IMG/VR virus record: IMGVR_UViG_3300026521_000471
Location: 124,001-188,000 of that record
Length of the DNA stretch: 64,000 nucleotides
Strand: one strand, 5' to 3'
Under the pieces are notes generated by a model that was not told where the DNA came from, ran no database searches, and worked only from the letters and a program-made list of their open reading frames with translations. A program made the position numbers and the translations under genes. Shown one piece after another: positions 51,866-59,636 of the stretch; positions within the stretch are counted from its first letter, which is position 1; each line of letters begins with the position of its first letter.

Positions 51866-53005
51866 ATGAAAAAAAGTATGAGAGAAGAATCTTTAGGAAC
51901 TAGACTTAAAGGTTATGAAAGAGAGTTTGAATCAGTAATCGATCCAAAGGATTTTATTATTTGTAGAATTGATGGACATAAATTTAGCAAATATACAAAA
52001 GGTATGAAAAAACCATTTGATAAAATGTTGTCAAATACAATGGAGGAAACTACTAAAGACCTTGTTGAAAAATTTGGAGCCGTAACGGGCTATACGCAAT
52101 CTGATGAAATTTCATTGGTTTTTGTCCCTCAATTCAAAGAAAGATTAATACCTATTGAAACCAAAGAATTATTTGTTCTTAATGATGAAGAAGCAACCTA
52201 TAAAGTTTATGACAAAGAATACAACTTGCTAGGTTCATTAGATATTAGTTATGAAGATATGGATGATGAATATTTCAGTATTAACTTTTGGGTAGTTTCT
52301 GATACTAATGATGAAATTATCGATCAATGTTCTTGGCAAAATAGAAACTCTAAAACTGAGGCTAAAGCATTAGAAACGCTTTTAAAGTATATCATTAAGA
52401 AAGTTGAAATAACAAATGAGCAAATTTTTGGAGGAAGAGTTCAGAAATTAACTTCTTTGATTGCGGCATATACTACTATGCAGTTTAATAAACACTTTTC
52501 TAAATTTTTAGAAAAAACATACGAAGATTATGAAGAAAAATTAGAAAAGGGCGAAATCGATACGAATAGTTTAGAGGCCATGAAATACCTTAAAACAATG
52601 GATGAAAAAGTAGGTAATGCTTGGTTTGATGCTAGAGTTTATGGCGTATCATCTAAAGAAGAAGCATTTAACAGTATTATGTGGCGAATTCGTGATGCCG
52701 AGAAGAACTCTAGATCAATGTTTGCACAGACATACTGCTCTCATAAATCGCTATTAGGAAAAAATGGTCTTGAACAGGTTGAATACTGTAAAGAAACTAC
52801 TGGTAAAGATTGGGAAGAAGTTGAAGATAAATACAAATATGGCATTTTAGTTAAAAAAGAAAAATATCTTAAACCTATTTCTGAAGGGACTATGGATTAT
52901 GCTCAAAATGATTTTGTAGAAAGATCCAGAATTATTAGTTGGGCTGAAAAAATTACTACTTTCTCTGGTGAAAAAGTTGAAATGGTTGTTAGGAAATATA
53001 AATGA
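51866..53005 (+). CDS. Thg1-like 3'-5' nucleotidyltransferase with internal insertion
   Basis: CRIDGHKFSKYT, KPFD, GYTQSDEISL, FGGRVQKL, FDAR, WRIRDAEKNS. Confidence 0.88.
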   Translation: MKKSMREESLGTRLKGYEREFESVIDPKDFIICRIDGHKFSKYTKGMKKPFDKMLSNTMEETTKDLVEKFGAVTGYTQSDEISLVFVPQFKERLIPIETKELFVLNDEEATYKVYDKEYNLLGSLDISYEDMDDEYFSINFWVVSDTNDEIIDQCSWQNRNSKTEAKALETLLKYIIKKVEITNEQIFGGRVQKLTSLIAAYTTMQFNKHFSKFLEKTYEDYEEKLEKGEIDTNSLEAMKYLKTMDEKVGNAWFDARVYGVSSKEEAFNSIMWRIRDAEKNSRSMFAQTYCSHKSLLGKNGLEQVEYCKETTGKDWEEVEDKYKYGILVKKEKYLKPISEGTMDYAQNDFVERSRIISWAEKITTFSGEKVEMVVRKYK

Positions 53006-53268
53006 TTTCTAATCCTCCAGAAGATTTAGTAGAGGTTGTGAAACTTCTACTAACAGATAATCTTAAAGATTTTAAACCTTTAGATGATTTTATTAAAACA
53101 GATGAAAATGATTTGATAAAATATCATTTTAGTTTGGGTATGGAGTTAAGAAATCATTATAGTTTATGGACGAAAAGATTCGAAGATAAAAATGGCTTTG
53201 AAATTCATCCAGATGACGTATCATTTGAATTTATAAAATATGCTCATACACAATTAAAAATTAATTAG
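53002..53268 (+). CDS. small protein, DUF6794-like
   Basis: HFSLGMELRNHYSLW..HPDDVS. Confidence 0.5.
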   Translation: MISNPPEDLVEVVKLLLTDNLKDFKPLDDFIKTDENDLIKYHFSLGMELRNHYSLWTKRFEDKNGFEIHPDDVSFEFIKYAHTQLKIN

Positions 53269-53276
53269 GAAAATTT

Positions 53277-53705
53277 ATGAAACCTACGTCTATTGGAATT
53301 ATTCCCTATCGGTTTTCTGAAAACGGGGTATCTATTCTTTTAATGCGGTCTTCTAAGAAAAATGATAGATTCGATTTTGTTAAAGGTAAGATAGAACCTT
53401 ATGAAACTAGAGTAGACTGTTGTTTACGAGAAGTTCAGGAAGAAATAGGTGTTTCACTTTCCAAAGAAGATTTAGACTTTTCTGTTAAGCAATACAATAA
53501 GAAGAAAAATATTGAATTATTCTTTATTCATTGGGATAAATATTTGTATAAGCAATTTAAATTAGATGAACGAGAAGTTTTTGAACTAAAATGGTTTAAT
53601 TTGAATGAAATACCTACAATTTCTCAGAACCAACGTTTGATTATTACGAAAATAAATGAAAGATTTAACAAATTACATCAACTACTAAGGAGTAACTATG
53701 TTTGA
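53277..53705 (+). CDS. NUDIX hydrolase
   Basis: KGKIEPYETRVDCCLREVQEEIG. Confidence 0.85.
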   Translation: MKPTSIGIIPYRFSENGVSILLMRSSKKNDRFDFVKGKIEPYETRVDCCLREVQEEIGVSLSKEDLDFSVKQYNKKKNIELFFIHWDKYLYKQFKLDEREVFELKWFNLNEIPTISQNQRLIITKINERFNKLHQLLRSNYV

Positions 53706-53843
53706 TGAATTAAAAATTACTTGTCTTAAAACTGGCGAATTTAAAATACTTAATATATGGGAAAGTAGACTATCTATTCATGACCTCAATATTATAACAT
53801 TGTTTTACAAAAATCATAAAGATTTTACTATTGAAGTTGTTGA

Positions 53844-54365
53844 ATGAACGCCTTGTTCTTAGATATTGATGGAGTTTTAAATAATTACCATCTTAAAGAA
53901 CCATTTACTTTTCCAAACGGTTATACACAGCAACCAGTTAAAGGCACTCAAAATAAATGGAATGGTTTAATGGGTATGGATTATGATAAAGTTAATTTAT
54001 TAAATGAAATACTTGAAAGTAACGAGTGGAAAGTAATAATATCAAGCTCTTGGTATTATTCGGATAGTACTGTTAATGCGTTAAAACATTTTGGTTTTAA
54101 ATATTCAGATAGAATTATTGGTGGTACAAATAGAAAATCATATGGTAGAGGAAAACAAATCCTAGATGCTGTTGAAGATTTTAAAGTAACAGATTTTATT
54201 ATTTTAGATGATGAACTATTTGATATTACTGGAAACTCTGAATTTGTTAGTAATAATATGCGAGAAATATTTAGAGATAGAGTGTTTAAAACAAATCCAT
54301 ACATAGGTTTAACTGAAAAGACAGTCTCTAATATTTTAAAAAGATTAGACTATTTTATAATTTAA
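53844..54365 (+). CDS. HAD phosphatase of the RNA-repair (Swiss-army-knife) type
   Basis: LFLDIDGVLN, VIISSSW, RGKQI, FIILDD, GLT. Confidence 0.75.
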   Translation: MNALFLDIDGVLNNYHLKEPFTFPNGYTQQPVKGTQNKWNGLMGMDYDKVNLLNEILESNEWKVIISSSWYYSDSTVNALKHFGFKYSDRIIGGTNRKSYGRGKQILDAVEDFKVTDFIILDDELFDITGNSEFVSNNMREIFRDRVFKTNPYIGLTEKTVSNILKRLDYFII

Positions 54366-54403
54366 GGTATAAATATATTAAAAATAGAATATGGAGAATA
54401 TTT

Positions 54404-54658
54404 ATGAAATTTTCAACAGTAAAAGAAATGGAAGAGACATTGAAAAAAATTAAATCAAAAAAAGAATTATCTCAAGATATATCATTTAGAAGTCAAGGTG
54501 AAGAAATTTTTCTTGAATTTATAGGTGAAGGAACAAGACAAAATCTTAAAGATATGATATGGATAGGTAGAGAAACAGCAGATAATCTAAGGATTTCATT
54601 TGATGATAATGGCGATGATTCAATTAATATCCTAGAATATTCTTTAAATAGAGGATAA
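54404..54658 (+). CDS. small late hypothetical protein
   Basis: TATAAATA at 54368 and GGAG RBS. Confidence 0.6.
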   Translation: MKFSTVKEMEETLKKIKSKKELSQDISFRSQGEEIFLEFIGEGTRQNLKDMIWIGRETADNLRISFDDNGDDSINILEYSLNRG

Positions 54659-54662
54659 TAAA

Positions 54663-55814
54663 ATGCGAGTTGATAATATCTTAATAAAAACAGAGTATGG
54701 AGATATAGAAATCTCAGGAAGAGTAGATAGCGGTGAATTTATTCCAGATGATTTAGATATTTCAACGGAATTAGGTGAATTTTTAGGAAAATGGATTGAA
54801 GCTGGAAATTTATTTTTTTCAGATAATGAAATTGATATGGTCGGTCAAGATATTGATGATGATTTAATCGATGAATTAAAAAATTTCGTTACATTGAGTG
54901 ATTTTTCAGATCCTATGAGAGCATTAGCTTTACATCAACATACAGGATACGATTTTACAAATATTGATGAAGATAGAAACCCATACACATTTACATCTGG
55001 AAGAGAAGAATATATGGTTTTGACCGATGATGAAGCTGATGAAATGGCTAAAGAACGGGTTGAAAATTTATTAGATGATGTAGGATTTGATGGATTTAGT
55101 GATTGGGCTAAAGATCATGCATTAGATAATTTTATTGATACTGATTGGTTTGACGATGCAAAAATTGAAATGAGTATGAGCTATGCTGAAGATATTAAAC
55201 ACGAGGGTGCAAATTCGGATGAATACATTAATAGACTACATGAAGAAATGGTAGAATTAGGTGTTCTTTTTGAACCGGAATGGCCTGAAGAACCAGATGA
55301 ATCAGATTATACCTATGAAAGAGAGGAATTTGATAGTTCAGATTTTTATGATAATGAACCAGTAGAAGATGATTATGAAACTGAAGAAGAATGGGAAGAA
55401 GCACATAGTAAATGGGAAGATGATTTATCAAATGCTGAAAAAGAATGGGAAGAAGAACAAGACCGTTTAGAAGAAGAAGCTCAAGAAGAATATGACGATG
55501 CGATTGAAGCTTGGGAACGTGAAAAAGAAGAATATGAATCAGATTTAGAAAATGATATAGATAATAATATTGAAGAGTTTGCTGAAAAACGTGTAGAAGA
55601 TGAAGACGGCATCGAATATTGGAAAAATAATATTGGTGATATTTCCGATGTAGTAAAAGAACAAGGTTTATTAGACGAAGACGCTTTTATAGAATGGATT
55701 GTTGAAACTGATGGTAGAGGTACTAATATTGCAACTTATGATGAGGCGGAGTACGAAGAAACTGTAACCTTAAATGGTGAAACTGAAGATTTTTATATTT
55801 ACAGAACCGAATAA
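54663..55814 (+). CDS. extremely acidic hypothetical protein
   Basis: 383 aa, D/E-rich with periodic W/Y. Confidence 0.7.
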   Translation: MRVDNILIKTEYGDIEISGRVDSGEFIPDDLDISTELGEFLGKWIEAGNLFFSDNEIDMVGQDIDDDLIDELKNFVTLSDFSDPMRALALHQHTGYDFTNIDEDRNPYTFTSGREEYMVLTDDEADEMAKERVENLLDDVGFDGFSDWAKDHALDNFIDTDWFDDAKIEMSMSYAEDIKHEGANSDEYINRLHEEMVELGVLFEPEWPEEPDESDYTYEREEFDSSDFYDNEPVEDDYETEEEWEEAHSKWEDDLSNAEKEWEEEQDRLEEEAQEEYDDAIEAWEREKEEYESDLENDIDNNIEEFAEKRVEDEDGIEYWKNNIGDISDVVKEQGLLDEDAFIEWIVETDGRGTNIATYDEAEYEETVTLNGETEDFYIYRTE

Positions 55815-55884
55815 ATTACCACTTTATATTTTTTTAAGACTCTTTTAGATATAATTATTATATATTAAATAAAGGGGTCTTAAA

Positions 55885-57288
55885 ATGGCTTTATTAACTT
55901 ACGATGAAGTATTAGAAATCACAAAAATAAATGAAACTTTTAAAATGAAACACCAAAAAATAGGTAACACAGAAATTGCAATGTGTACTTATTTTTTAGC
56001 AAATGCAGGTGATTTTTTTGATGCAAAATTAGATGGCTCTATGGTTAGAGCCACAGAATTAAGAGGTATAACATTTGTAAAAGCTCCAAATTCAGACTGG
56101 AAAACATATTTGTTTATCGATAAATTTTTTAATATCGGTCAAACAAATGGAACTAATATAACAAATATGGAACTTTCTATCAATGACTCAACTGAAATTT
56201 GTAATATTAATAAACTTTTTATCGATGAAAATGAGAAAACATATCGTGCAATAGATTTAAAGTTAAATATGATTGTTGCTGAATTTGATAGAAATACTGA
56301 AACTCATGGGGATTTTTTTCAAATTTTATCACTAGATAAAAAAGTTTTACCTACATTGAAACCTGAAAATTCTTGGATGTATGAGGATGTAAAAGATTTA
56401 GAAATTGTAAGAATTGCAAATAAAGAAGATGGATCCGCAATAAGATTTCTTTTAATTGAAGGAAAATTAGTGGCTAAAACAAAATTTTCTTTTGAATCAG
56501 AACAATGCAAATTAGCTATGGAAATAGTTGAAAAAGATCCTAAACTTAAAGCATTTATTTTAACAACTTTAGAGTTTGGATATGCAGCAATTTTTGAAAT
56601 AGTTTCACCATTTAATAAAATCGTTTTAACATATCCAGAAACATCTCTTAGATTGTTGCAACTAAGAGATGAAAATAATGATGGGTTATATCTAAATATA
56701 TATGATAATACATTAGTAAAAGCATTTAATATCTTGACTGCCAATCAAGAACCTTTATACACACTTGATGAGTTACTTAAATTAAAAGAAACCGTTGAAG
56801 ATAAAGAAGGTTGGGTAATTACATTTGAAAATGGAAAAATGGCAAAGGTAAAAACTGATTGGTATATGTCACTTCATGGTATTTTAACTGATGGGTTAAA
56901 AGAACATAAAATAATTGAAAAGGTTTTAGACGAAACGATTGATGATACTATAGCAATGATACCAGAAGAAAATATTGAAGAACGAGATTTTATTGATGGT
57001 ATCTCTGAAATTATAATTAATCATGTAAATCATTTAGTGTCAGATGCAGAAGCTAAATTTAAAAATTCATGGAATGGAAATAAAAAAGAGTTAGCACTAA
57101 AATTTAAGGATGATAAACGTGCTTTTCCATATATAATGAGTTTTGCAAATGGAAAAAATATTGAAGAAATTGAAAAACAAGTTATAGATAGAGTTAAATT
57201 TGAATGTAGACGTTTAGAAATGGCTAAACAATACCTTAAAAATTTAGGTTTTGACAAAGAACTCGAAATAAAAATTGAGGATGATTAA
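55885..57288 (+). CDS. T4 Rnl1-like RNA ligase with insertion
   Basis: ELRG, KFFN, motif I KEDGS, FEIVSP.N.IV..Y, EGWV, KVKTDWY..LH. Confidence 0.85.
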   Translation: MALLTYDEVLEITKINETFKMKHQKIGNTEIAMCTYFLANAGDFFDAKLDGSMVRATELRGITFVKAPNSDWKTYLFIDKFFNIGQTNGTNITNMELSINDSTEICNINKLFIDENEKTYRAIDLKLNMIVAEFDRNTETHGDFFQILSLDKKVLPTLKPENSWMYEDVKDLEIVRIANKEDGSAIRFLLIEGKLVAKTKFSFESEQCKLAMEIVEKDPKLKAFILTTLEFGYAAIFEIVSPFNKIVLTYPETSLRLLQLRDENNDGLYLNIYDNTLVKAFNILTANQEPLYTLDELLKLKETVEDKEGWVITFENGKMAKVKTDWYMSLHGILTDGLKEHKIIEKVLDETIDDTIAMIPEENIEERDFIDGISEIIINHVNHLVSDAEAKFKNSWNGNKKELALKFKDDKRAFPYIMSFANGKNIEEIEKQVIDRVKFECRRLEMAKQYLKNLGFDKELEIKIEDD

Positions 57289-57290
57289 TC

Positions 57291-57458
57291 ATGAAATACG
57301 GTTTTAGTTTATTTGAATTAATTATTGTAGTTGTAATATTGGGAATTCTAGCAGCAGTTGCTATTCCTAGATTATCAAATTCTTCATCAAATAATGATAA
57401 AATTTCATACAAAAAAATAATTTTTACTAATGGTGATGGTGGATCCGCCGAGAATTGA
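57291..57458 (+). CDS. mini prepilin-like peptide (55 aa, not in ORF track)
   Basis: MKYG/FSLFELIIVVVILGILAAVAIPRL class III signal (G-1, F+1, E+5); GAGG RBS. Confidence 0.75.
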   Translation: MKYGFSLFELIIVVVILGILAAVAIPRLSNSSSNNDKISYKKIIFTNGDGGSAEN

Positions 57459-57818
57459 ACTCGGGTCTGCCACTACTTCCATTTAAATCTCATTTACAAG
57501 TTTAGTTTGATTTTTAATACTTTAATACTTAGATAACCAAACAAATCGGTATTAAAGGCACTTGATATAATTTTCGTCTAAAGGTATCAAGTTTAACTTT
57601 AGCTTATCTATTTTTTATTATACACTCTGTATTTATTAGTAAATAGACAACTAATAAACTGAGTGATTCCGGGCTCCCAGAGGGAGGATTAAGCAGCTAC
57701 TCTCGCAGTCTGTGGAATATAAAGTTTTGTGTTTGCATTTAAGCTTTTTTGATGATTAAGTCATCACTCTACTTGCAATTTAAATTTCTTATAGCAACAT
57801 CGATCCCAATTCGGACCC
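57437..57818 (-). ncRNA. ssrA: tmRNA
   Basis: 5' GGGTCCG pairs with 3' CGGATCC-ACCA with a G3-U wobble; T-arm CCGAG-TTCAATT-CTCGG; tag ORF ANTKLYIPQTARVAA* at 57736-57689. Confidence 0.93.
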
Positions 57819-57825
57819 ATAAAAA

Positions 57826-57856
57826 ATATCAGTATATAGAAATTATATACTGATAT
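57826..57856. repeat. 13-bp inverted repeat next to the tmRNA 5' end
   Basis: ATATCAGTATATA-GAAAT-TATATACTGATAT. Confidence 0.7.
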
Positions 57857-58136
57857 GATAATATCCTTTATTTTATACCCAAGGTAACAAAGAACCCTTT
57901 ACATAAAAAAACACATACGATATTAATTTATCTTTTTACTTGTAAGTAAATTAGAGCGTTATCAATTAAGATAAATACGTTCCATAAGAGTTATTTTCTC
58001 TAGGTCAATCTCTAAGATAAAATTTTAAAGAGTAATTTAAATCTCTTATATATTTATTTTACAATTTTTAATTTAATTATAAGGTATTTTTTGATATAAT
58101 ATATTACAAATTTTAAATAATTAAGGAGATTGTCCT

Positions 58137-59636
58137 ATGGCAAAATTTAACCAAGGTACTAAAAGTATCCCAAATAGTAAAAATATGGCTGGAGGGGTAT
58201 CATATGATCGCCCAATAAAAAAAGAGGTTGCGACTGTTGTTTTAAACTCTATGCTTAATGGTGATTCATATTATGAAAAAGAAGGTGAACGTTTAAAACG
58301 AATTGAAACTCTTATCACTACATCAAAGTCTGATGCTGAGTTTGTAGCAAAAGCTATGGTGTTTACTAGAACAAATGGTCGTCTTAGAAGTATTTCACAT
58401 TTCATGGCAAATATTTTAGCAGAAAATGTAAAAGGTAGTGACTTTTTACGTTCAGCATTAACAAAAGCTATTGTAAGACCGGATGATATGACAGAAATGT
58501 TATCACTTTGGGATACAAGAAATCCAAATAAAATGGTTCCGAATTCACTTAGAAGAGCCTTTAAGAAAGCTTTGGAAACTAAATTTGATGAATATCAATT
58601 TCGTAAATATGCTCAACCAAAATCAAAAGTGAAACTAAAAGATGTCGTTAAACTAGCACATCCTTCACCTAAGAATTTTGATGATGAAACTATTTTTAAA
58701 AGAGTTATCGAAGATCAATTAAAGGCTGTTGAAACAGCACAAACTATCAATGCATCTAAAACTGGTGAAGATCGAGTTGAAGCATATATGAAAGAAATTA
58801 AATCTGGTAAAATGGGTTATATGGCAGCATTAAAAAATATTAGAACATTGATGGAAAATAATATTTCAGAAGATGACTTAAAACAATGGTCTAATTTTAT
58901 AACTGATCCTAAAAGGGTACAAAAATCAATGGTACTTCCATTTAGATTTGTTGATGCATGGAATGCTGTAAAAGATTTACCTATTAATGAATTTAAGAAA
59001 AATATTGTTAAGAAAGCACTTGAGAGAGCTTTTGCCCTATCAGCTGGAAATACAAATATTGCTTCTGATGATGAAAAAGTGGCTATTTTACTTGATGAAT
59101 CAGGTTCTATGGGCGGATATTCAAATAATGACCGTAAAACACCATTTTATATTGGTAAAGTATTATCAGCTGCGATGAAAGTAGGTATGGATGATGATAA
59201 GTGTCTGTTTTATACTTGGGCAGATACATGTACAAGAAGAGATATAAAAGGTTTGTCATCTTTTGATTTTATCAATAATTTAAATACTAGAGGTGGAGGT
59301 ACTGATGTATCAGCTCCTTTAAAAGAGTTAATTAAAACAAAAACATTTGTTGATAAAATTATAATCTTTAGTGATATGCAGATGTATGGTGGATGGGGAA
59401 ATATTGGAGATCAACTCAAAAATTATTTAAAAACATATCGTAAAGAAGTCAATCCAAATGTAAAAGTATTATTTTGGAATTTAGAAGGATATGGTGGTGG
59501 TTCACCATTAGATATTGAAAAAACATCTGATATTTTTGAAGTAGCTGGTTTTTCAGATAGCATGCTTCAAATTATACCTAAATTATGGAGTGATAAAGAT
59601 TTTTTAATTAAAGAGATTGAAGCTATATCACTTTAA
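58137..59636 (+). CDS. Ro60/TROVE-domain RNA-binding protein with vWA domain
   Basis: NMAGGVSY, SYYE, RPDD, FDEYQFRKY, LKDVVKLAHP, LPFRF, DESGSM, GGTD, FSDMQ, VAGFSD. Confidence 0.9.
   Translation: MAKFNQGTKSIPNSKNMAGGVSYDRPIKKEVATVVLNSMLNGDSYYEKEGERLKRIETLITTSKSDAEFVAKAMVFTRTNGRLRSISHFMANILAENVKGSDFLRSALTKAIVRPDDMTEMLSLWDTRNPNKMVPNSLRRAFKKALETKFDEYQFRKYAQPKSKVKLKDVVKLAHPSPKNFDDETIFKRVIEDQLKAVETAQTINASKTGEDRVEAYMKEIKSGKMGYMAALKNIRTLMENNISEDDLKQWSNFITDPKRVQKSMVLPFRFVDAWNAVKDLPINEFKKNIVKKALERAFALSAGNTNIASDDEKVAILLDESGSMGGYSNNDRKTPFYIGKVLSAAMKVGMDDDKCLFYTWADTCTRRDIKGLSSFDFINNLNTRGGGTDVSAPLKELIKTKTFVDKIIIFSDMQMYGGWGNIGDQLKNYLKTYRKEVNPNVKVLFWNLEGYGGGSPLDIEKTSDIFEVAGFSDSMLQIIPKLWSDKDFLIKEIEAISL

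What the first reader, a model, noticed from the sequence alone, without database searches (positions are those of the whole stretch)
57291..57458. Unannotated 55-aa mini-pilin overlapping the tmRNA 3' end
Seen: a clear class III signal and alpha-1 helix (G/FSLFELIIVVVILGILAAVAIP) with an RBS. Only about 29 residues follow, with no globular head, and the last 22 nt are antisense to the tmRNA acceptor end. Known: this helix is what prepilin peptidase and T4P/T2SS/competence machines recognise. Inference: a headless decoy pilin that blocks pilus assembly (superinfection exclusion or blocking DNA uptake), or the remnant of a host pilin gene captured along with ssrA.
Basis: partly seen in the sequence, partly recalled or inferred. 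Interest (0 to 1): 0.62.

Follow-up and report, generated by a model that had tools for sequence, protein, structure and literature searches.

The report
Headless pilin gene of vent phages
A giant phage from hydrothermal-vent bacteria carries a real, conserved 55-residue gene that copies only the membrane-anchoring front end of its likely host's pilus protein, probably to tamper with the host's pili or DNA-uptake fibres; the idea is already in the literature for other phages and has not been tested by experiment.

Summary
Window 57291-57458(+) is an intact 55-codon ORF with an RBS. It has a class III (prepilin) signal scoring above the Pfam and NCBIfam cut-offs. Its last 22 nt are antisense to the 3' end of a complete phage tmRNA.

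It is not a stray remnant. Eight variants of 48-72 aa sit downstream of the orthologous Rnl1-type RNA ligase, or of its companion ORF, in related AT-rich vent phages. All keep Gly-1, Phe+1, Glu+5 and Pro22. Their first 26 codons are near saturation at synonymous sites but differ little in protein (pN 0.05-0.19). All share a short C-terminal motif, [FY]xx[TIV][IV][FY].

The helix is 77-92% identical to the pilin of a Campylobacterota contig from the window's own metagenome. The nearest named relatives are Sulfurimonas and Sulfurovum pseudopilins.

The tmRNA overlap is a late accident. In relatives L144, L142 and L138 the gene ends at its own stop, clear of any detected tmRNA.

"Captured together with ssrA" is rejected. 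[quoted passage not shown] is the best reading, but the function is untested.

Truncated PilA-like proteins in virulent Pseudomonas phages were noted in 2026 (PMC12952977). This is therefore a new member of a known but uncharacterised kind.

The parts
57291..57458 (+). Mini-pilin ORF: 55 codons plus TGA stop
   Evidence: ORF list and sequence. PF07963 26.7 bits. TIGR02532 30.1 bits. An identical protein is called on 7 contigs from at least 5 samples.
57277..57281 (+). Shine-Dalgarno GAGGA, 9 nt before the ATG, inside the last codons of the RNA ligase gene
   Evidence: Sequence. Identical in L092 and L136. No terminator-like site was found between the ligase and the ORF.
57291..57302 (+). Four-residue leader M-K-Y-G. 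The predicted prepilin-peptidase cut follows Gly4.
   Evidence: Sequence. Gly-1 is invariant in all eight family members. Cleavage itself is inferred, not shown.
57303..57368 (+). Alpha-1N segment: mature residues 1-22 with Phe1, Glu5, Gly14 and Pro22
   Evidence: HMM matches. hhalign against Campylobacterota pilins gives probability 99.8% over columns 1-35. AF2 pLDDT is 80-96 here. Purifying selection.
57369..57407 (+). Polar Asn/Ser-rich linker (residues 27-39), variable in length and sequence among relatives
   Evidence: Alignments. In-frame indels of 3, 9 and 6 nt against L092.
57408..57425 (+). C-terminal motif YKKIIF (residues 40-45), the window's instance of the family motif [FY]xx[TIV][IV][FY]
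   Evidence: Present in all eight family members and aligned in one register by MAFFT. Shuffled tails show it in 0.1-0.4% of trials. The motif was defined post hoc.
57437..57458 (.). 22-nt overlap: the last nt of codon 49, codons 50-55 and the stop are antisense to the tmRNA acceptor/T-arm 3' end
   Evidence: Coordinates. The overlap occurs only in window, L092 and L136. It is absent in L144 (108-nt spacer), L142 and L138.
57437..57818 (-). Complete phage tmRNA (tag ANTKLYIPQTARVAA), convergent with the mini-pilin
   Evidence: ARAGORN. Rfam RF00023, 115.5 bits, model positions 1-374. Conserved in L092, L136, L144, L142, L094 and L084.
55885..57288 (+). T4 Rnl1-type RNA ligase directly upstream, probably co-transcribed with the mini-pilin. 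It is the synteny anchor for the family.
   Evidence: PF09511. Orthologues precede the mini-pilin in L092, L136, L144, L138 and L142.
58137..59636 (+). Ro60/TROVE + vWA protein, the downstream synteny anchor
   Evidence: PF05731 and PF25045. Used to fetch the relatives.

Best explanation
The ORF is a functional phage accessory gene for a 'headless pilin'. It consists of a prepilin-type signal, the transmembrane alpha-1N helix copied from the pilins/pseudopilins of the likely host (vent Campylobacterota of the Sulfurimonas/Sulfurovum kind), a variable polar linker, and a six-residue C-terminal motif.

Proposed mechanism; every step here is inferred.
1. It is transcribed with the RNA ligase operon and inserted in the inner membrane like a pilin.
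2. It is cut after Gly4, and Phe is N-methylated, by the host prepilin peptidase. The phage record encodes none.
3. Through Glu5 and alpha-1N it enters the host type IV filament assembly platform (type IV pilus, competence pseudopilus or T2SS pseudopilus) in competition with the host subunits.
4. Lacking the globular domain, it either poisons or caps assembly or yields defective fibres.
5. This removes a receptor for superinfecting phages and/or shuts down DNA uptake in the infected cell.

Shown: the gene is real, conserved, short by design and under purifying selection on the pilin-specific residues.

The tmRNA overlap is a derived by-product. The spacer present in L144 is missing, so the frame reads on into the tmRNA until the first stop.
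For: - Signal and helix score above the curated cut-offs.
- The family has eight variants of 48-72 aa. Six lie in sequenced synteny downstream of the orthologous RNA ligase or its companion ORF119/120: window, L092 and L136, L144 with ligase 77% and Ro60 78% identical to the window's, L138 and L142. L145 shows a likely ORF120 homologue upstream, judged by eye from the C-terminus only. P0173 lies on a 531-nt contig with no context.
- Invariant in all eight: M1, K2, Gly-1, Phe+1, Glu+5, Gly14 and Pro22.
- Selection on the 26 codons from Gly-1, between phage lineages: pS 0.59-0.92 against pN 0.05-0.19. Binomial p is 4e-4 for L138-L142, 6e-5 for L092-L142 and 3e-7 for L142-L139.
- Window against L092: the indels inside the ORF are 3, 9 and 6 nt, while the indels in nearby non-coding DNA are 1-2 nt.
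- The C-terminal motif is conserved in all eight.
- The helix is 77-92% identical in protein, but only 69-79% in DNA, to pilin P0012. That pilin lies on L143, a bacterial contig from the window's own metagenome (Ga0256828) that carries Csd3_N and PGBA_N genes.
- The nearest named relatives are Sulfurimonas, Sulfurovum, Sulfuricurvum and Campylobacterota 'type II secretion system' pseudopilins.
- Host-type pilin mRNA is abundant in vent metatranscriptomes.
- No prepilin peptidase is found in the phage record.
- Precedent: prophage FimU mimics give anti-phage defence, and truncated PilA of about 60 aa occurs in six virulent Pseudomonas phages (PMC12952977).
- PHROGs holds short pilin-like phage families with profiles of 59-72 positions.
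Against: - No functional data of any kind exist. Translation, cleavage, membrane insertion and any effect on pili are all untested.
- No RNA contig covers the ORF in the two metatranscriptomes laid.
- Over the whole ORF the three closest variants give omega 0.24-0.5. The excess of synonymous changes is not significant there (p = 0.09), so the linker is only loosely constrained.
- The deep-divergence selection signal would partly reflect evolution in host genes if lineages had re-acquired the helix independently. L139 sits at another locus.
- Two more distant relatives lack the gene (L094, L084), so it is dispensable.
- The host is inferred, not shown. Which filament system it has is unknown.
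Confidence: 0.5

Rival explanations
1. It is a generic small inner-membrane protein, for example a holin/antiholin-like, injection-blocking or membrane-anchored peptide. It happens to have been built from a pilin transmembrane helix and needs neither the prepilin peptidase nor the pilus machinery.
For: Only one helix plus a short tail is present. The tail has no detectable homology to pilins. Other small phage membrane proteins that act on pili, such as PfsE, which binds PilC, are not pilins (PMC8764522).
Against: A plain membrane anchor does not need Gly-1, Phe+1, a buried Glu+5 and Pro22. All are invariant across eight variants while synonymous sites are near saturation. The helix tracks the candidate host's pilin at 77-92% identity.
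Confidence: 0.2
2. Like prophage P-FimU, it is incorporated into otherwise working filaments. It changes their surface or tip so that competing phages cannot bind, without blocking assembly.
For: P-FimU works this way. The same paper proposes that truncated P-PilA might still incorporate while lacking phage-binding sites (PMC12952977). The conserved C-terminal motif could be a contact element.
Against: There is no globular domain to pack in a filament. No evidence exists for incorporation. The complex prediction with the candidate host pilin gave no verdict, which counts neither way.
Confidence: 0.15
3. It is a decaying remnant of a host pilin gene picked up with, or truncated by, the neighbouring ssrA (tmRNA) gene, and has no function.
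For: The ORF runs into the tmRNA and ends at the first stop there. The linker is low-complexity and evolves fast. Isolated truncated pilin fragments do occur in metagenomes.
Against: - The tmRNA predates the gene's present arrangement and occurs in relatives without it.
- L144, L142 and L138 have short versions with their own stop, clear of any detected tmRNA.
- The frame is open in all eight variants.
- There is strong purifying selection on alpha-1N and a conserved C-terminal motif.
- A simulation at the observed divergence keeps the frame free of stops in only about 15% of trials for one pair.
Confidence: 0.05
4. Its main role is RNA-level: convergent transcription of the ORF gives an antisense RNA against the 3' end of the tmRNA and so regulates tmRNA maturation or level.
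For: A 22-nt antisense overlap with the acceptor end. No terminator-like site was found on either strand between the two genes.
Against: The overlap exists only in window, L092 and L136. L144 has a 108-nt spacer and L142 a whole gene in between. Selection acts on the protein sequence.
Confidence: 0.04

Closest known systems
Truncated PilA-like proteins (about 60 N-terminal residues) of virulent Pseudomonas phages, noted by Sztanko et al., Cell Rep 2026 (PMC12952977); probably the short PHROG families phrog_13280, phrog_11263 and phrog_10597
   Same: Phage-encoded, with only the signal and N-terminal helix of a pilin and no head domain. They recur in several phages. The proposed roles are to incorporate without phage-binding sites or to inhibit assembly. 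The function is untested. The window protein matches these PHROG profiles at E 1e-5 to 1e-7.
   Different: A different host phylum (inferred Campylobacterota) and a different phage clade (jumbo, AT-rich, from vents). The PHROG matches cover only the helix. This family has its own C-terminal motif and a fixed place next to an RNA-repair/tmRNA block. I could not fetch the Pseudomonas proteins to compare them directly.
Prophage-encoded FimU (P-FimU) and P-PilA pilin mimics (PMC12952977)
   Same: A phage copy of a host type IV filament subunit that is used against competing phages.
   Different: Those are full-length pilins with globular domains, shown to be incorporated into working pili and expressed from prophages. 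This one is headless, and no integrase was found in the record.
Type IV pilins and T2SS/competence pseudopilins (PF07963, TIGR02532), specifically the 105-126-aa Sulfurimonas/Sulfurovum-type 'type II secretion system protein' family
   Same: The same leader length, Gly-1/Phe+1/Glu+5, Gly14, Pro22 and hydrophobic alpha-1N. hhalign probability is 99.8% over the first 35 columns.
   Different: No alpha-1C and no beta-sheet head. Homology stops at about residue 35.
Naturally short pilins: Geobacter PilA-N and Flp/Tad (type IVc) pilins (named from general knowledge and PMC6904877 / PMC11067988 titles and abstracts)
   Same: These are filament subunits that lack the usual globular domain, so a headless subunit is not in itself incompatible with assembly.
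   Different: They are bacterial, not phage genes. Flp pilins have a different signal motif and their own peptidase, and no Flp_Fap Pfam match was listed at E <= 1. Geobacter PilA-N keeps a full-length alpha-1 and a partner gene downstream, whereas here the downstream neighbour is a tmRNA.
Small phage inhibitors of type IV pili that are not pilins, e.g. Pf4 PfsE, which binds PilC (PMC8764522)
   Same: A small phage protein that suppresses type IV pili for superinfection exclusion.
   Different: PfsE is not described as a pilin or a prepilin-peptidase substrate. Its target, PilC, was shown by two-hybrid assay, whereas nothing is shown here.

Membership tests
Type IV pilin / pseudopilin superfamily (class III signal, PF07963 / TIGR02532) | Short basic leader ending in Gly (or Ala), then Phe/Met at +1 and Glu at +5 | tested here: met
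   The leader is M-K-Y-G, followed by Phe5 and Glu9 of the precursor. These residues are invariant in eight variants.
Type IV pilin / pseudopilin superfamily (class III signal, PF07963 / TIGR02532) | Profile match to the N-terminal methylation/cleavage domain above the curated cut-off | tested here: met
   PF07963 scores 26.7 bits against 21.2. TIGR02532 scores 30.1 bits against 16.3.
Type IV pilin / pseudopilin superfamily (class III signal, PF07963 / TIGR02532) | Long alpha-1 helix (about 50 residues) packed on a C-terminal globular alpha-beta domain | tested here: not met
   The whole protein is 55 aa. AF2 gives one helix, confident only to about residue 30. Homology to pilins ends at column 35. 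The full-length equivalog models (GspG, PilA, ComGC) score far below their cut-offs.
Type IV pilin / pseudopilin superfamily (class III signal, PF07963 / TIGR02532) | Cleavage and N-methylation by a prepilin peptidase, and assembly into a filament | not testable with these tools
   No peptidase A24 gene is in the phage record, so a host enzyme would be needed. This requires biochemistry.
Phage-encoded truncated ('headless') pilins (PMC12952977; short PHROG pilin-like families) | Encoded in a phage genome, not in flanking host DNA | tested here: met
   The window lies inside a 224-kb IMG/VR virus record. It sits among phage topoisomerase II, helicase, PhoH, PNK and RNA ligase genes. The same synteny is found in five further contigs.
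Phage-encoded truncated ('headless') pilins (PMC12952977; short PHROG pilin-like families) | Only the N-terminal 50-70 residues of a pilin, recurring intact in several phages | tested here: met
   Eight variants of 48-72 aa, all with open frames.
Phage-encoded truncated ('headless') pilins (PMC12952977; short PHROG pilin-like families) | Sequence homology to the described Pseudomonas-phage family beyond the shared pilin helix | tested here: inconclusive
   PHROG short-family matches (E 1e-5 to 1e-9) cover only residues 1-35. tblastn against cultured phages returned nothing, which I attribute to the low-complexity filter. The paper's Table S3 is not held.
Phage-encoded truncated ('headless') pilins (PMC12952977; short PHROG pilin-like families) | Interferes with, or is incorporated into, host type IV filaments | not testable with these tools
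   The complex prediction gave no verdict. This is also untested for the published family.
Flp/Tad (type IVc) pilins | Flp-type signal and Flp_Fap profile match | tested here: not met
   The Pfam scan at E <= 1 lists only N_methyl and a sub-threshold DUF6715. The motif here is GFxxxE, not the Flp type.
P-FimU / P-PilA full-length phage pilin mimics | Full-length fold superimposable on the host pilin | tested here: not met
   There is no head domain.

The most novel reading that the evidence does not exclude
These jumbo phages of vent Campylobacterota carry a dedicated family of headless pilins, made of alpha-1N plus a conserved C-terminal peptide motif. After processing by the host peptidase, the protein acts as a dominant-negative subunit. 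It would shut down the host's type IV filament (pilus or competence pseudopilus) within the infected cell. The helix would be kept matched to the host pilin and the C-terminal motif would dock on a periplasmic machine component. This would be a general, sequence-programmable anti-pilus strategy of virulent phages, parallel to the uncharacterised truncated PilA of Pseudomonas phages.
Probability: 0.35. Interest if true: 0.6.

Novelty: new member of a known kind. Interest (0 to 1): 0.42.

Why it matters
Phage copies of pilus subunits have only just been shown to work as anti-phage devices, and headless versions have been noticed but never tested. This family adds an independent example from a different host phylum and an extreme habitat. 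It comes with unusually clear evolutionary evidence: strict conservation of exactly the residues that the prepilin peptidase and the assembly machine read, a free linker, and a short conserved C-terminal motif. That gives a compact, testable design (signal + alpha-1N + motif) for how a phage might switch off pili, competence or type II secretion. It also gives a marker for predicting hosts of uncultured phages, because the helix tracks the host pilin. The tmRNA overlap that first drew attention is incidental.

Tried and rejected
- **Cultured phages.** tblastn of the window protein and of P0002 against 50,697 phage records returned nothing, even at E = 10. I attribute this to BLAST's low-complexity filter on the hydrophobic helix. 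It is not evidence of absence.
- **IMG/VR.** The scan gave 80 loci, but these are ordinary 131-175-aa pilins that match only the helix.
- **Species genomes.** The scan gave 14 loci from many phyla, with helix-only matches, so it did not help with the host.
- **Exhaustive HMM search.** It returned 20,313 pilin-type hits. Only P0001 and P0002 matched over the whole length. The wider family emerged only after a profile search and context look-ups.
- **A 'GDGGSA' string shared with pilin P0009.** I considered it as a trace of a microhomology-mediated deletion and rejected it. L092 and L136 lack the 'GD', the 'GGSAEN' residues are dictated by the tmRNA antisense sequence, and it adds only about 4 bits.
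- **Tail similarity of L138 to the window by local alignment.** It was not significant against shuffles (p 0.05-0.5). Only the six-residue motif is shared.
- **Whole-ORF dN/dS among the three closest variants.** It was not significantly below 1 (p = 0.09).
- **Terminators.** There is no intrinsic terminator between the ligase, the ORF and the tmRNA.
- **Y RNA.** There is no Rfam hit between the tmRNA and Ro60.
- **Complex prediction** (candidate host pilin P0012 residues 6-116 with mini-pilin residues 5-55): no verdict, score 0.02. It counts neither for nor against binding.
- **RNA evidence.** The two metatranscriptomes are held only as contigs. None covers the ORF exactly. The signal at 57325-57377 comes from host-type pilin mRNAs, not from the phage gene.
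- **Supplementary table** of PMC12952977: not held.
- I re-ran the same test by reference.

Full report
**1. What is in the sequence**

Window 57291-57458(+) is an ATG-initiated ORF of 55 codons ending in TGA. GAGGA at 57277-57281 lies 9 nt upstream of the ATG. The preceding gene, a T4 Rnl1-type RNA ligase (55885-57288, PF09511), stops 2 nt before the ATG. No terminator-like site lies between them, so co-transcription and translational coupling are likely. This step is inferred.

The product begins with M-K-Y-G, followed by Phe, with Glu at +5. Then comes a 21-residue hydrophobic stretch with Gly14 and Pro22 in mature numbering.
- Pfam N_methyl scores 26.7 bits against a cut-off of 21.2.
- NCBIfam TIGR02532 scores 30.1 bits against a cut-off of 16.3.
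- The full-length GspG, PilA and ComGC models match only the first 25-35 residues and fall far below their cut-offs.
- AlphaFold2 predicts a single helix, confident only to about residue 30, and no globular part.

A complete tmRNA lies at 57437-57818(-). ARAGORN and Rfam both find it (115.5 bits over the whole model). The last 22 nt of the ORF are therefore antisense to the tmRNA 3' end.

**2. Where the window comes from**

The window is bases 124001-188000 of a 224,467-nt IMG/VR virus record, estimated 85% complete, with 27.9% G+C.
- The window carries topoisomerase II, helicase, PhoH and polynucleotide kinase/phosphatase genes.
- Around the ORF lies a block of RNA-repair and quality-control genes: Thg1, NUDIX, an HAD 'Swiss Army Knife' domain, RNA ligase, tmRNA and Ro60/TROVE-vWA.
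- The record has no tyrosine integrase and no prepilin peptidase.
- The ORF is the only prepilin-type motif in the record.
- The same phage, with a 100% identical ORF, occurs on seven contigs from at least five samples.
- Public runs that hold it are labelled hydrothermal vent, epibiont and biofilm metagenomes.

**3. Relatives**

I fetched relatives using Ro60 and the exact-protein index.

| Locus | Identity to the window | Mini-pilin | Relation to the tmRNA |
|---|---|---|---|
| L092, L136 | ligase 93-94%, Ro60 92-95% | 57 and 54 aa, same place | same tmRNA overlap |
| L144 | ligase 77%, Ro60 78% | 66 aa, directly after the ligase | own stop; tmRNA(-) 108 nt further on |
| L138 | ligase C-terminal part 58% | 48 aa, after ligase + a 120-aa ORF | own TAA stop; no tmRNA in the remaining 276 nt |
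| L142 | ligase C-end 62.5% | 72 aa, after ligase + a 119-aa ORF | homing-endonuclease-like ORF between it and the tmRNA(-) |
| L145 | no anchor gene on the contig | two in tandem, 52 and 64 aa | 1-kb contig, no tmRNA detected |
| P0173 | 531-nt contig, no context | 51 aa | not known |
| L139 | several proteins 31-54% | 59 aa, different tail | at another locus |
| L094 | Ro60 70% | none; a 116-aa ORF on the other strand | keeps the tmRNA |
| L084/L095 | Ro60 68% | none; purM instead | tmRNA inverted |

Three conclusions follow.
- The tmRNA is older than, and independent of, the mini-pilin.
- The space between the ligase and the tmRNA is a variable slot.
- The overlap seen in the window is a derived state. 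The spacer that L144 has is missing in the window lineage, so the frame reads on through the tmRNA end to the first stop. The final residues G-G-S-A-E-N are thus dictated by the tmRNA.

**4. Is it a gene under selection?**

*Invariant residues.* All eight variants of the main family are open. M1, K2, Gly-1, Phe+1, Glu+5, Gly14 and Pro22 are invariant.

*Indels.* Between the window and L092, flanking genes have dS 0.42-0.47 and omega 0.06. The three indels inside the ORF are 3, 9 and 6 nt, whereas indels in the adjacent non-coding DNA are 1-2 nt. Two of the three ORF indels lie in trinucleotide or hexanucleotide repeats, so this argument is suggestive only.

*Whole-ORF rates.* Over the non-overlapping part, omega is 0.5, 0.30 and 0.24 for the three close pairs. 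A parsimony count gives 10 synonymous against 23 non-synonymous changes, p = 0.09. The linker is therefore loosely constrained.

*The helix.* The 26 codons from Gly-1 tell a clearer story at greater depth. pS is 0.59-0.92, near saturation, against pN 0.05-0.19. Binomial p is 4e-4 for L138-L142, 6e-5 for L092-L142, 5e-3 for window-L138 and 3e-7 for L142-L139.

*The C-terminal motif.* All eight share [FY]xx[TIV][IV][FY] 3-10 residues from the end: YKKIIF in the window at 57408-57425, YNKVIF, FPITIF, FPHTVF, FPHTIY, YPNTIY and FPNIIY. MAFFT aligns them in one register although the linker length varies by more than 20 residues. Shuffled tails contain the motif in 0.1-0.4% of trials. I defined the motif after seeing the sequences, so that figure is descriptive.

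*The antisense frame.* The 58-codon antisense frame seen in the window is not open in L092.

Together this shows a protein-coding gene whose pilin-specific N-terminus and short C-terminal motif are maintained while the middle drifts.

**5. Relation to host pilins**

The exhaustive profile search found 20,313 pilin-type proteins, but similarity stops at about residue 33. hhalign of the family against 45 full-length relatives gives probability 99.8% over columns 1-35 only.

The nearest named relatives are 105-126-aa 'type II secretion system protein / GspH / GspG' pseudopilins of Sulfurimonas, Sulfurovum, Sulfuricurvum and unclassified Campylobacterota.

One of them, P0012, lies on L143, contig Ga0256828_1000404, from the same metagenome as the window's phage (Ga0256828_1000004).
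- L143 is plainly bacterial: it carries rpsL, rpsG, fusA, flagellar rod genes and priA.
- It has three pilin genes in a row.
- It carries Csd3_N and PGBA_N domains. Taking these as typical of the Helicobacter/Campylobacter lineage is my own knowledge.

The mini-pilins are 77-92% identical in protein to P0012 over the helix, but only 69-79% identical in DNA. This is long-term matching at the protein level, not a recent capture.

In two vent metatranscriptomes the signal at 57325-57377 comes from host-type pilin mRNAs that run on into '...AATRDDA...', one at k-mer depth 149. It does not come from the phage gene.

The host assignment (vent Campylobacterota) is an inference from these points and from the low G+C.

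**6. Mechanism**

Shown: a conserved phage gene for a prepilin signal + alpha-1N + linker + C-terminal motif, and no peptidase gene in the phage record.

Inferred, from established knowledge of type IV filament systems: the class III signal is what prepilin peptidases recognise, and Glu5 and alpha-1N mediate docking and subunit packing. On that basis the peptide would insert in the inner membrane and be processed by the host enzyme. It would then compete with host subunits at the assembly platform. Without a head domain it would poison or cap the filament, or yield defective fibres.

The benefit would be loss of a receptor or entry route for competing phages, loss of DNA uptake in the infected cell, or both.

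Sub-variants and rivals:
- Incorporation without blocking, as for P-FimU.
- A generic membrane peptide.
- An antisense regulator of the tmRNA.
- A dead remnant.

The last two are poorly compatible with the comparative data.

**7. What is known**

Sztanko et al. (PMC12952977) showed that prophage FimU mimics are built into Pseudomonas pili and block tip-binding phages.

The same paper reports full-length PilA-like genes in Xylella prophages. [quoted passage not shown] It proposes either incorporation without binding sites or inhibition of assembly, without experiments.

PHROGs holds several short pilin-like families (profiles of 59-72 positions, function unknown) that match the window protein over the helix. 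PfsE of Pf4 is a small non-pilin protein that blocks pili through PilC.

The window's gene is therefore a new member of a known, uncharacterised kind. It differs in host phylum, phage clade, C-terminal motif and fixed genomic neighbourhood.

**8. Verdict**

- Confidence that this is a real, selected gene encoding a headless pilin mimic: about 0.9.
- Confidence that it acts on the host type IV filament machinery as described: about 0.5.
- Interest: moderate (0.42).

Noticed in passing
window 57437-57818 (-): The phage-encoded tmRNA has an unusual tag (ANTKLYIPQTARVAA). Related tags occur in L092, L136, L144, L142 and L084. A biofilm metatranscriptome holds an exact 326-nt contig of it (57453-57778) at k-mer depth 240, against about 7 for flanking phage genes. 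This suggests strong expression, but the data are contigs only, so it is not proof.
   Followed up: partly
window 51866-59636 (+): A contiguous RNA-repair/quality-control block: Thg1-like, DUF6794, NUDIX, HAD 'Swiss Army Knife' domain, two unknown ORFs, Rnl1-type ligase, tmRNA, and Ro60/TROVE with a vWA domain. No Y-RNA family hit lies between the tmRNA and Ro60 (57780-58160). That spacer is 94% identical to L092 where flanking genes have dS of about 0.42-0.47. L136 carries two deletions in it.
   Followed up: partly
L092:3748-5327 vs L136:772-2342: The ligase genes are nearly identical (dS 0.015), but from the first codons of the mini-pilin onward dS jumps to 0.30. This indicates a recombination breakpoint at the ligase/mini-pilin junction, so the mini-pilin is exchanged as a module.
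   Followed up: partly
L084:1986-2816 and L142:683-1600 (-): Homing-endonuclease-like ORFs populate this locus in relatives. In L084 a 276-aa ORF sits before the C-terminal part of the ligase; it looks GIY-YIG-like by eye, with no family scan run. In L142 a NUMOD3-bearing ORF lies between the mini-pilin and the tmRNA, and its 3' end overlaps the mini-pilin's.
   Followed up: no
L145:462-816: Two mini-pilin genes lie in tandem (52 aa and 64 aa) on a 1-kb contig. Only the second has the C-terminal motif.
   Followed up: no
L139:1397-1576 (P0045) and P0084: A second mini-pilin subfamily (58-59 aa, tail ending ...TALGK) sits next to a Band_7 gene in a distant relative of the same jumbo-phage clade, at a different locus. 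This suggests repeated or mobile use of headless pilins in these phages.
   Followed up: partly
window 57437 joined to 58533, DNA run X3: One low-depth contig of an epibiont metagenome joins the exact tmRNA 3' end to the opposite strand inside a diverged Ro60 gene. It is probably a relative with a rearranged tmRNA segment, comparable to the inverted tmRNA in L084. A 219-nt skip (57177 to 57397) in run X4 has only 25 letters on its shorter side and is unreliable.
   Followed up: no
L143:10001-11367: The candidate host contig, from the same metagenome as the phage, carries three consecutive pilin genes (116, 150 and 150 aa). Two have Ala instead of Gly at -1. They lie between flagellar rod genes and priA, with no assembly genes nearby.
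   Followed up: no
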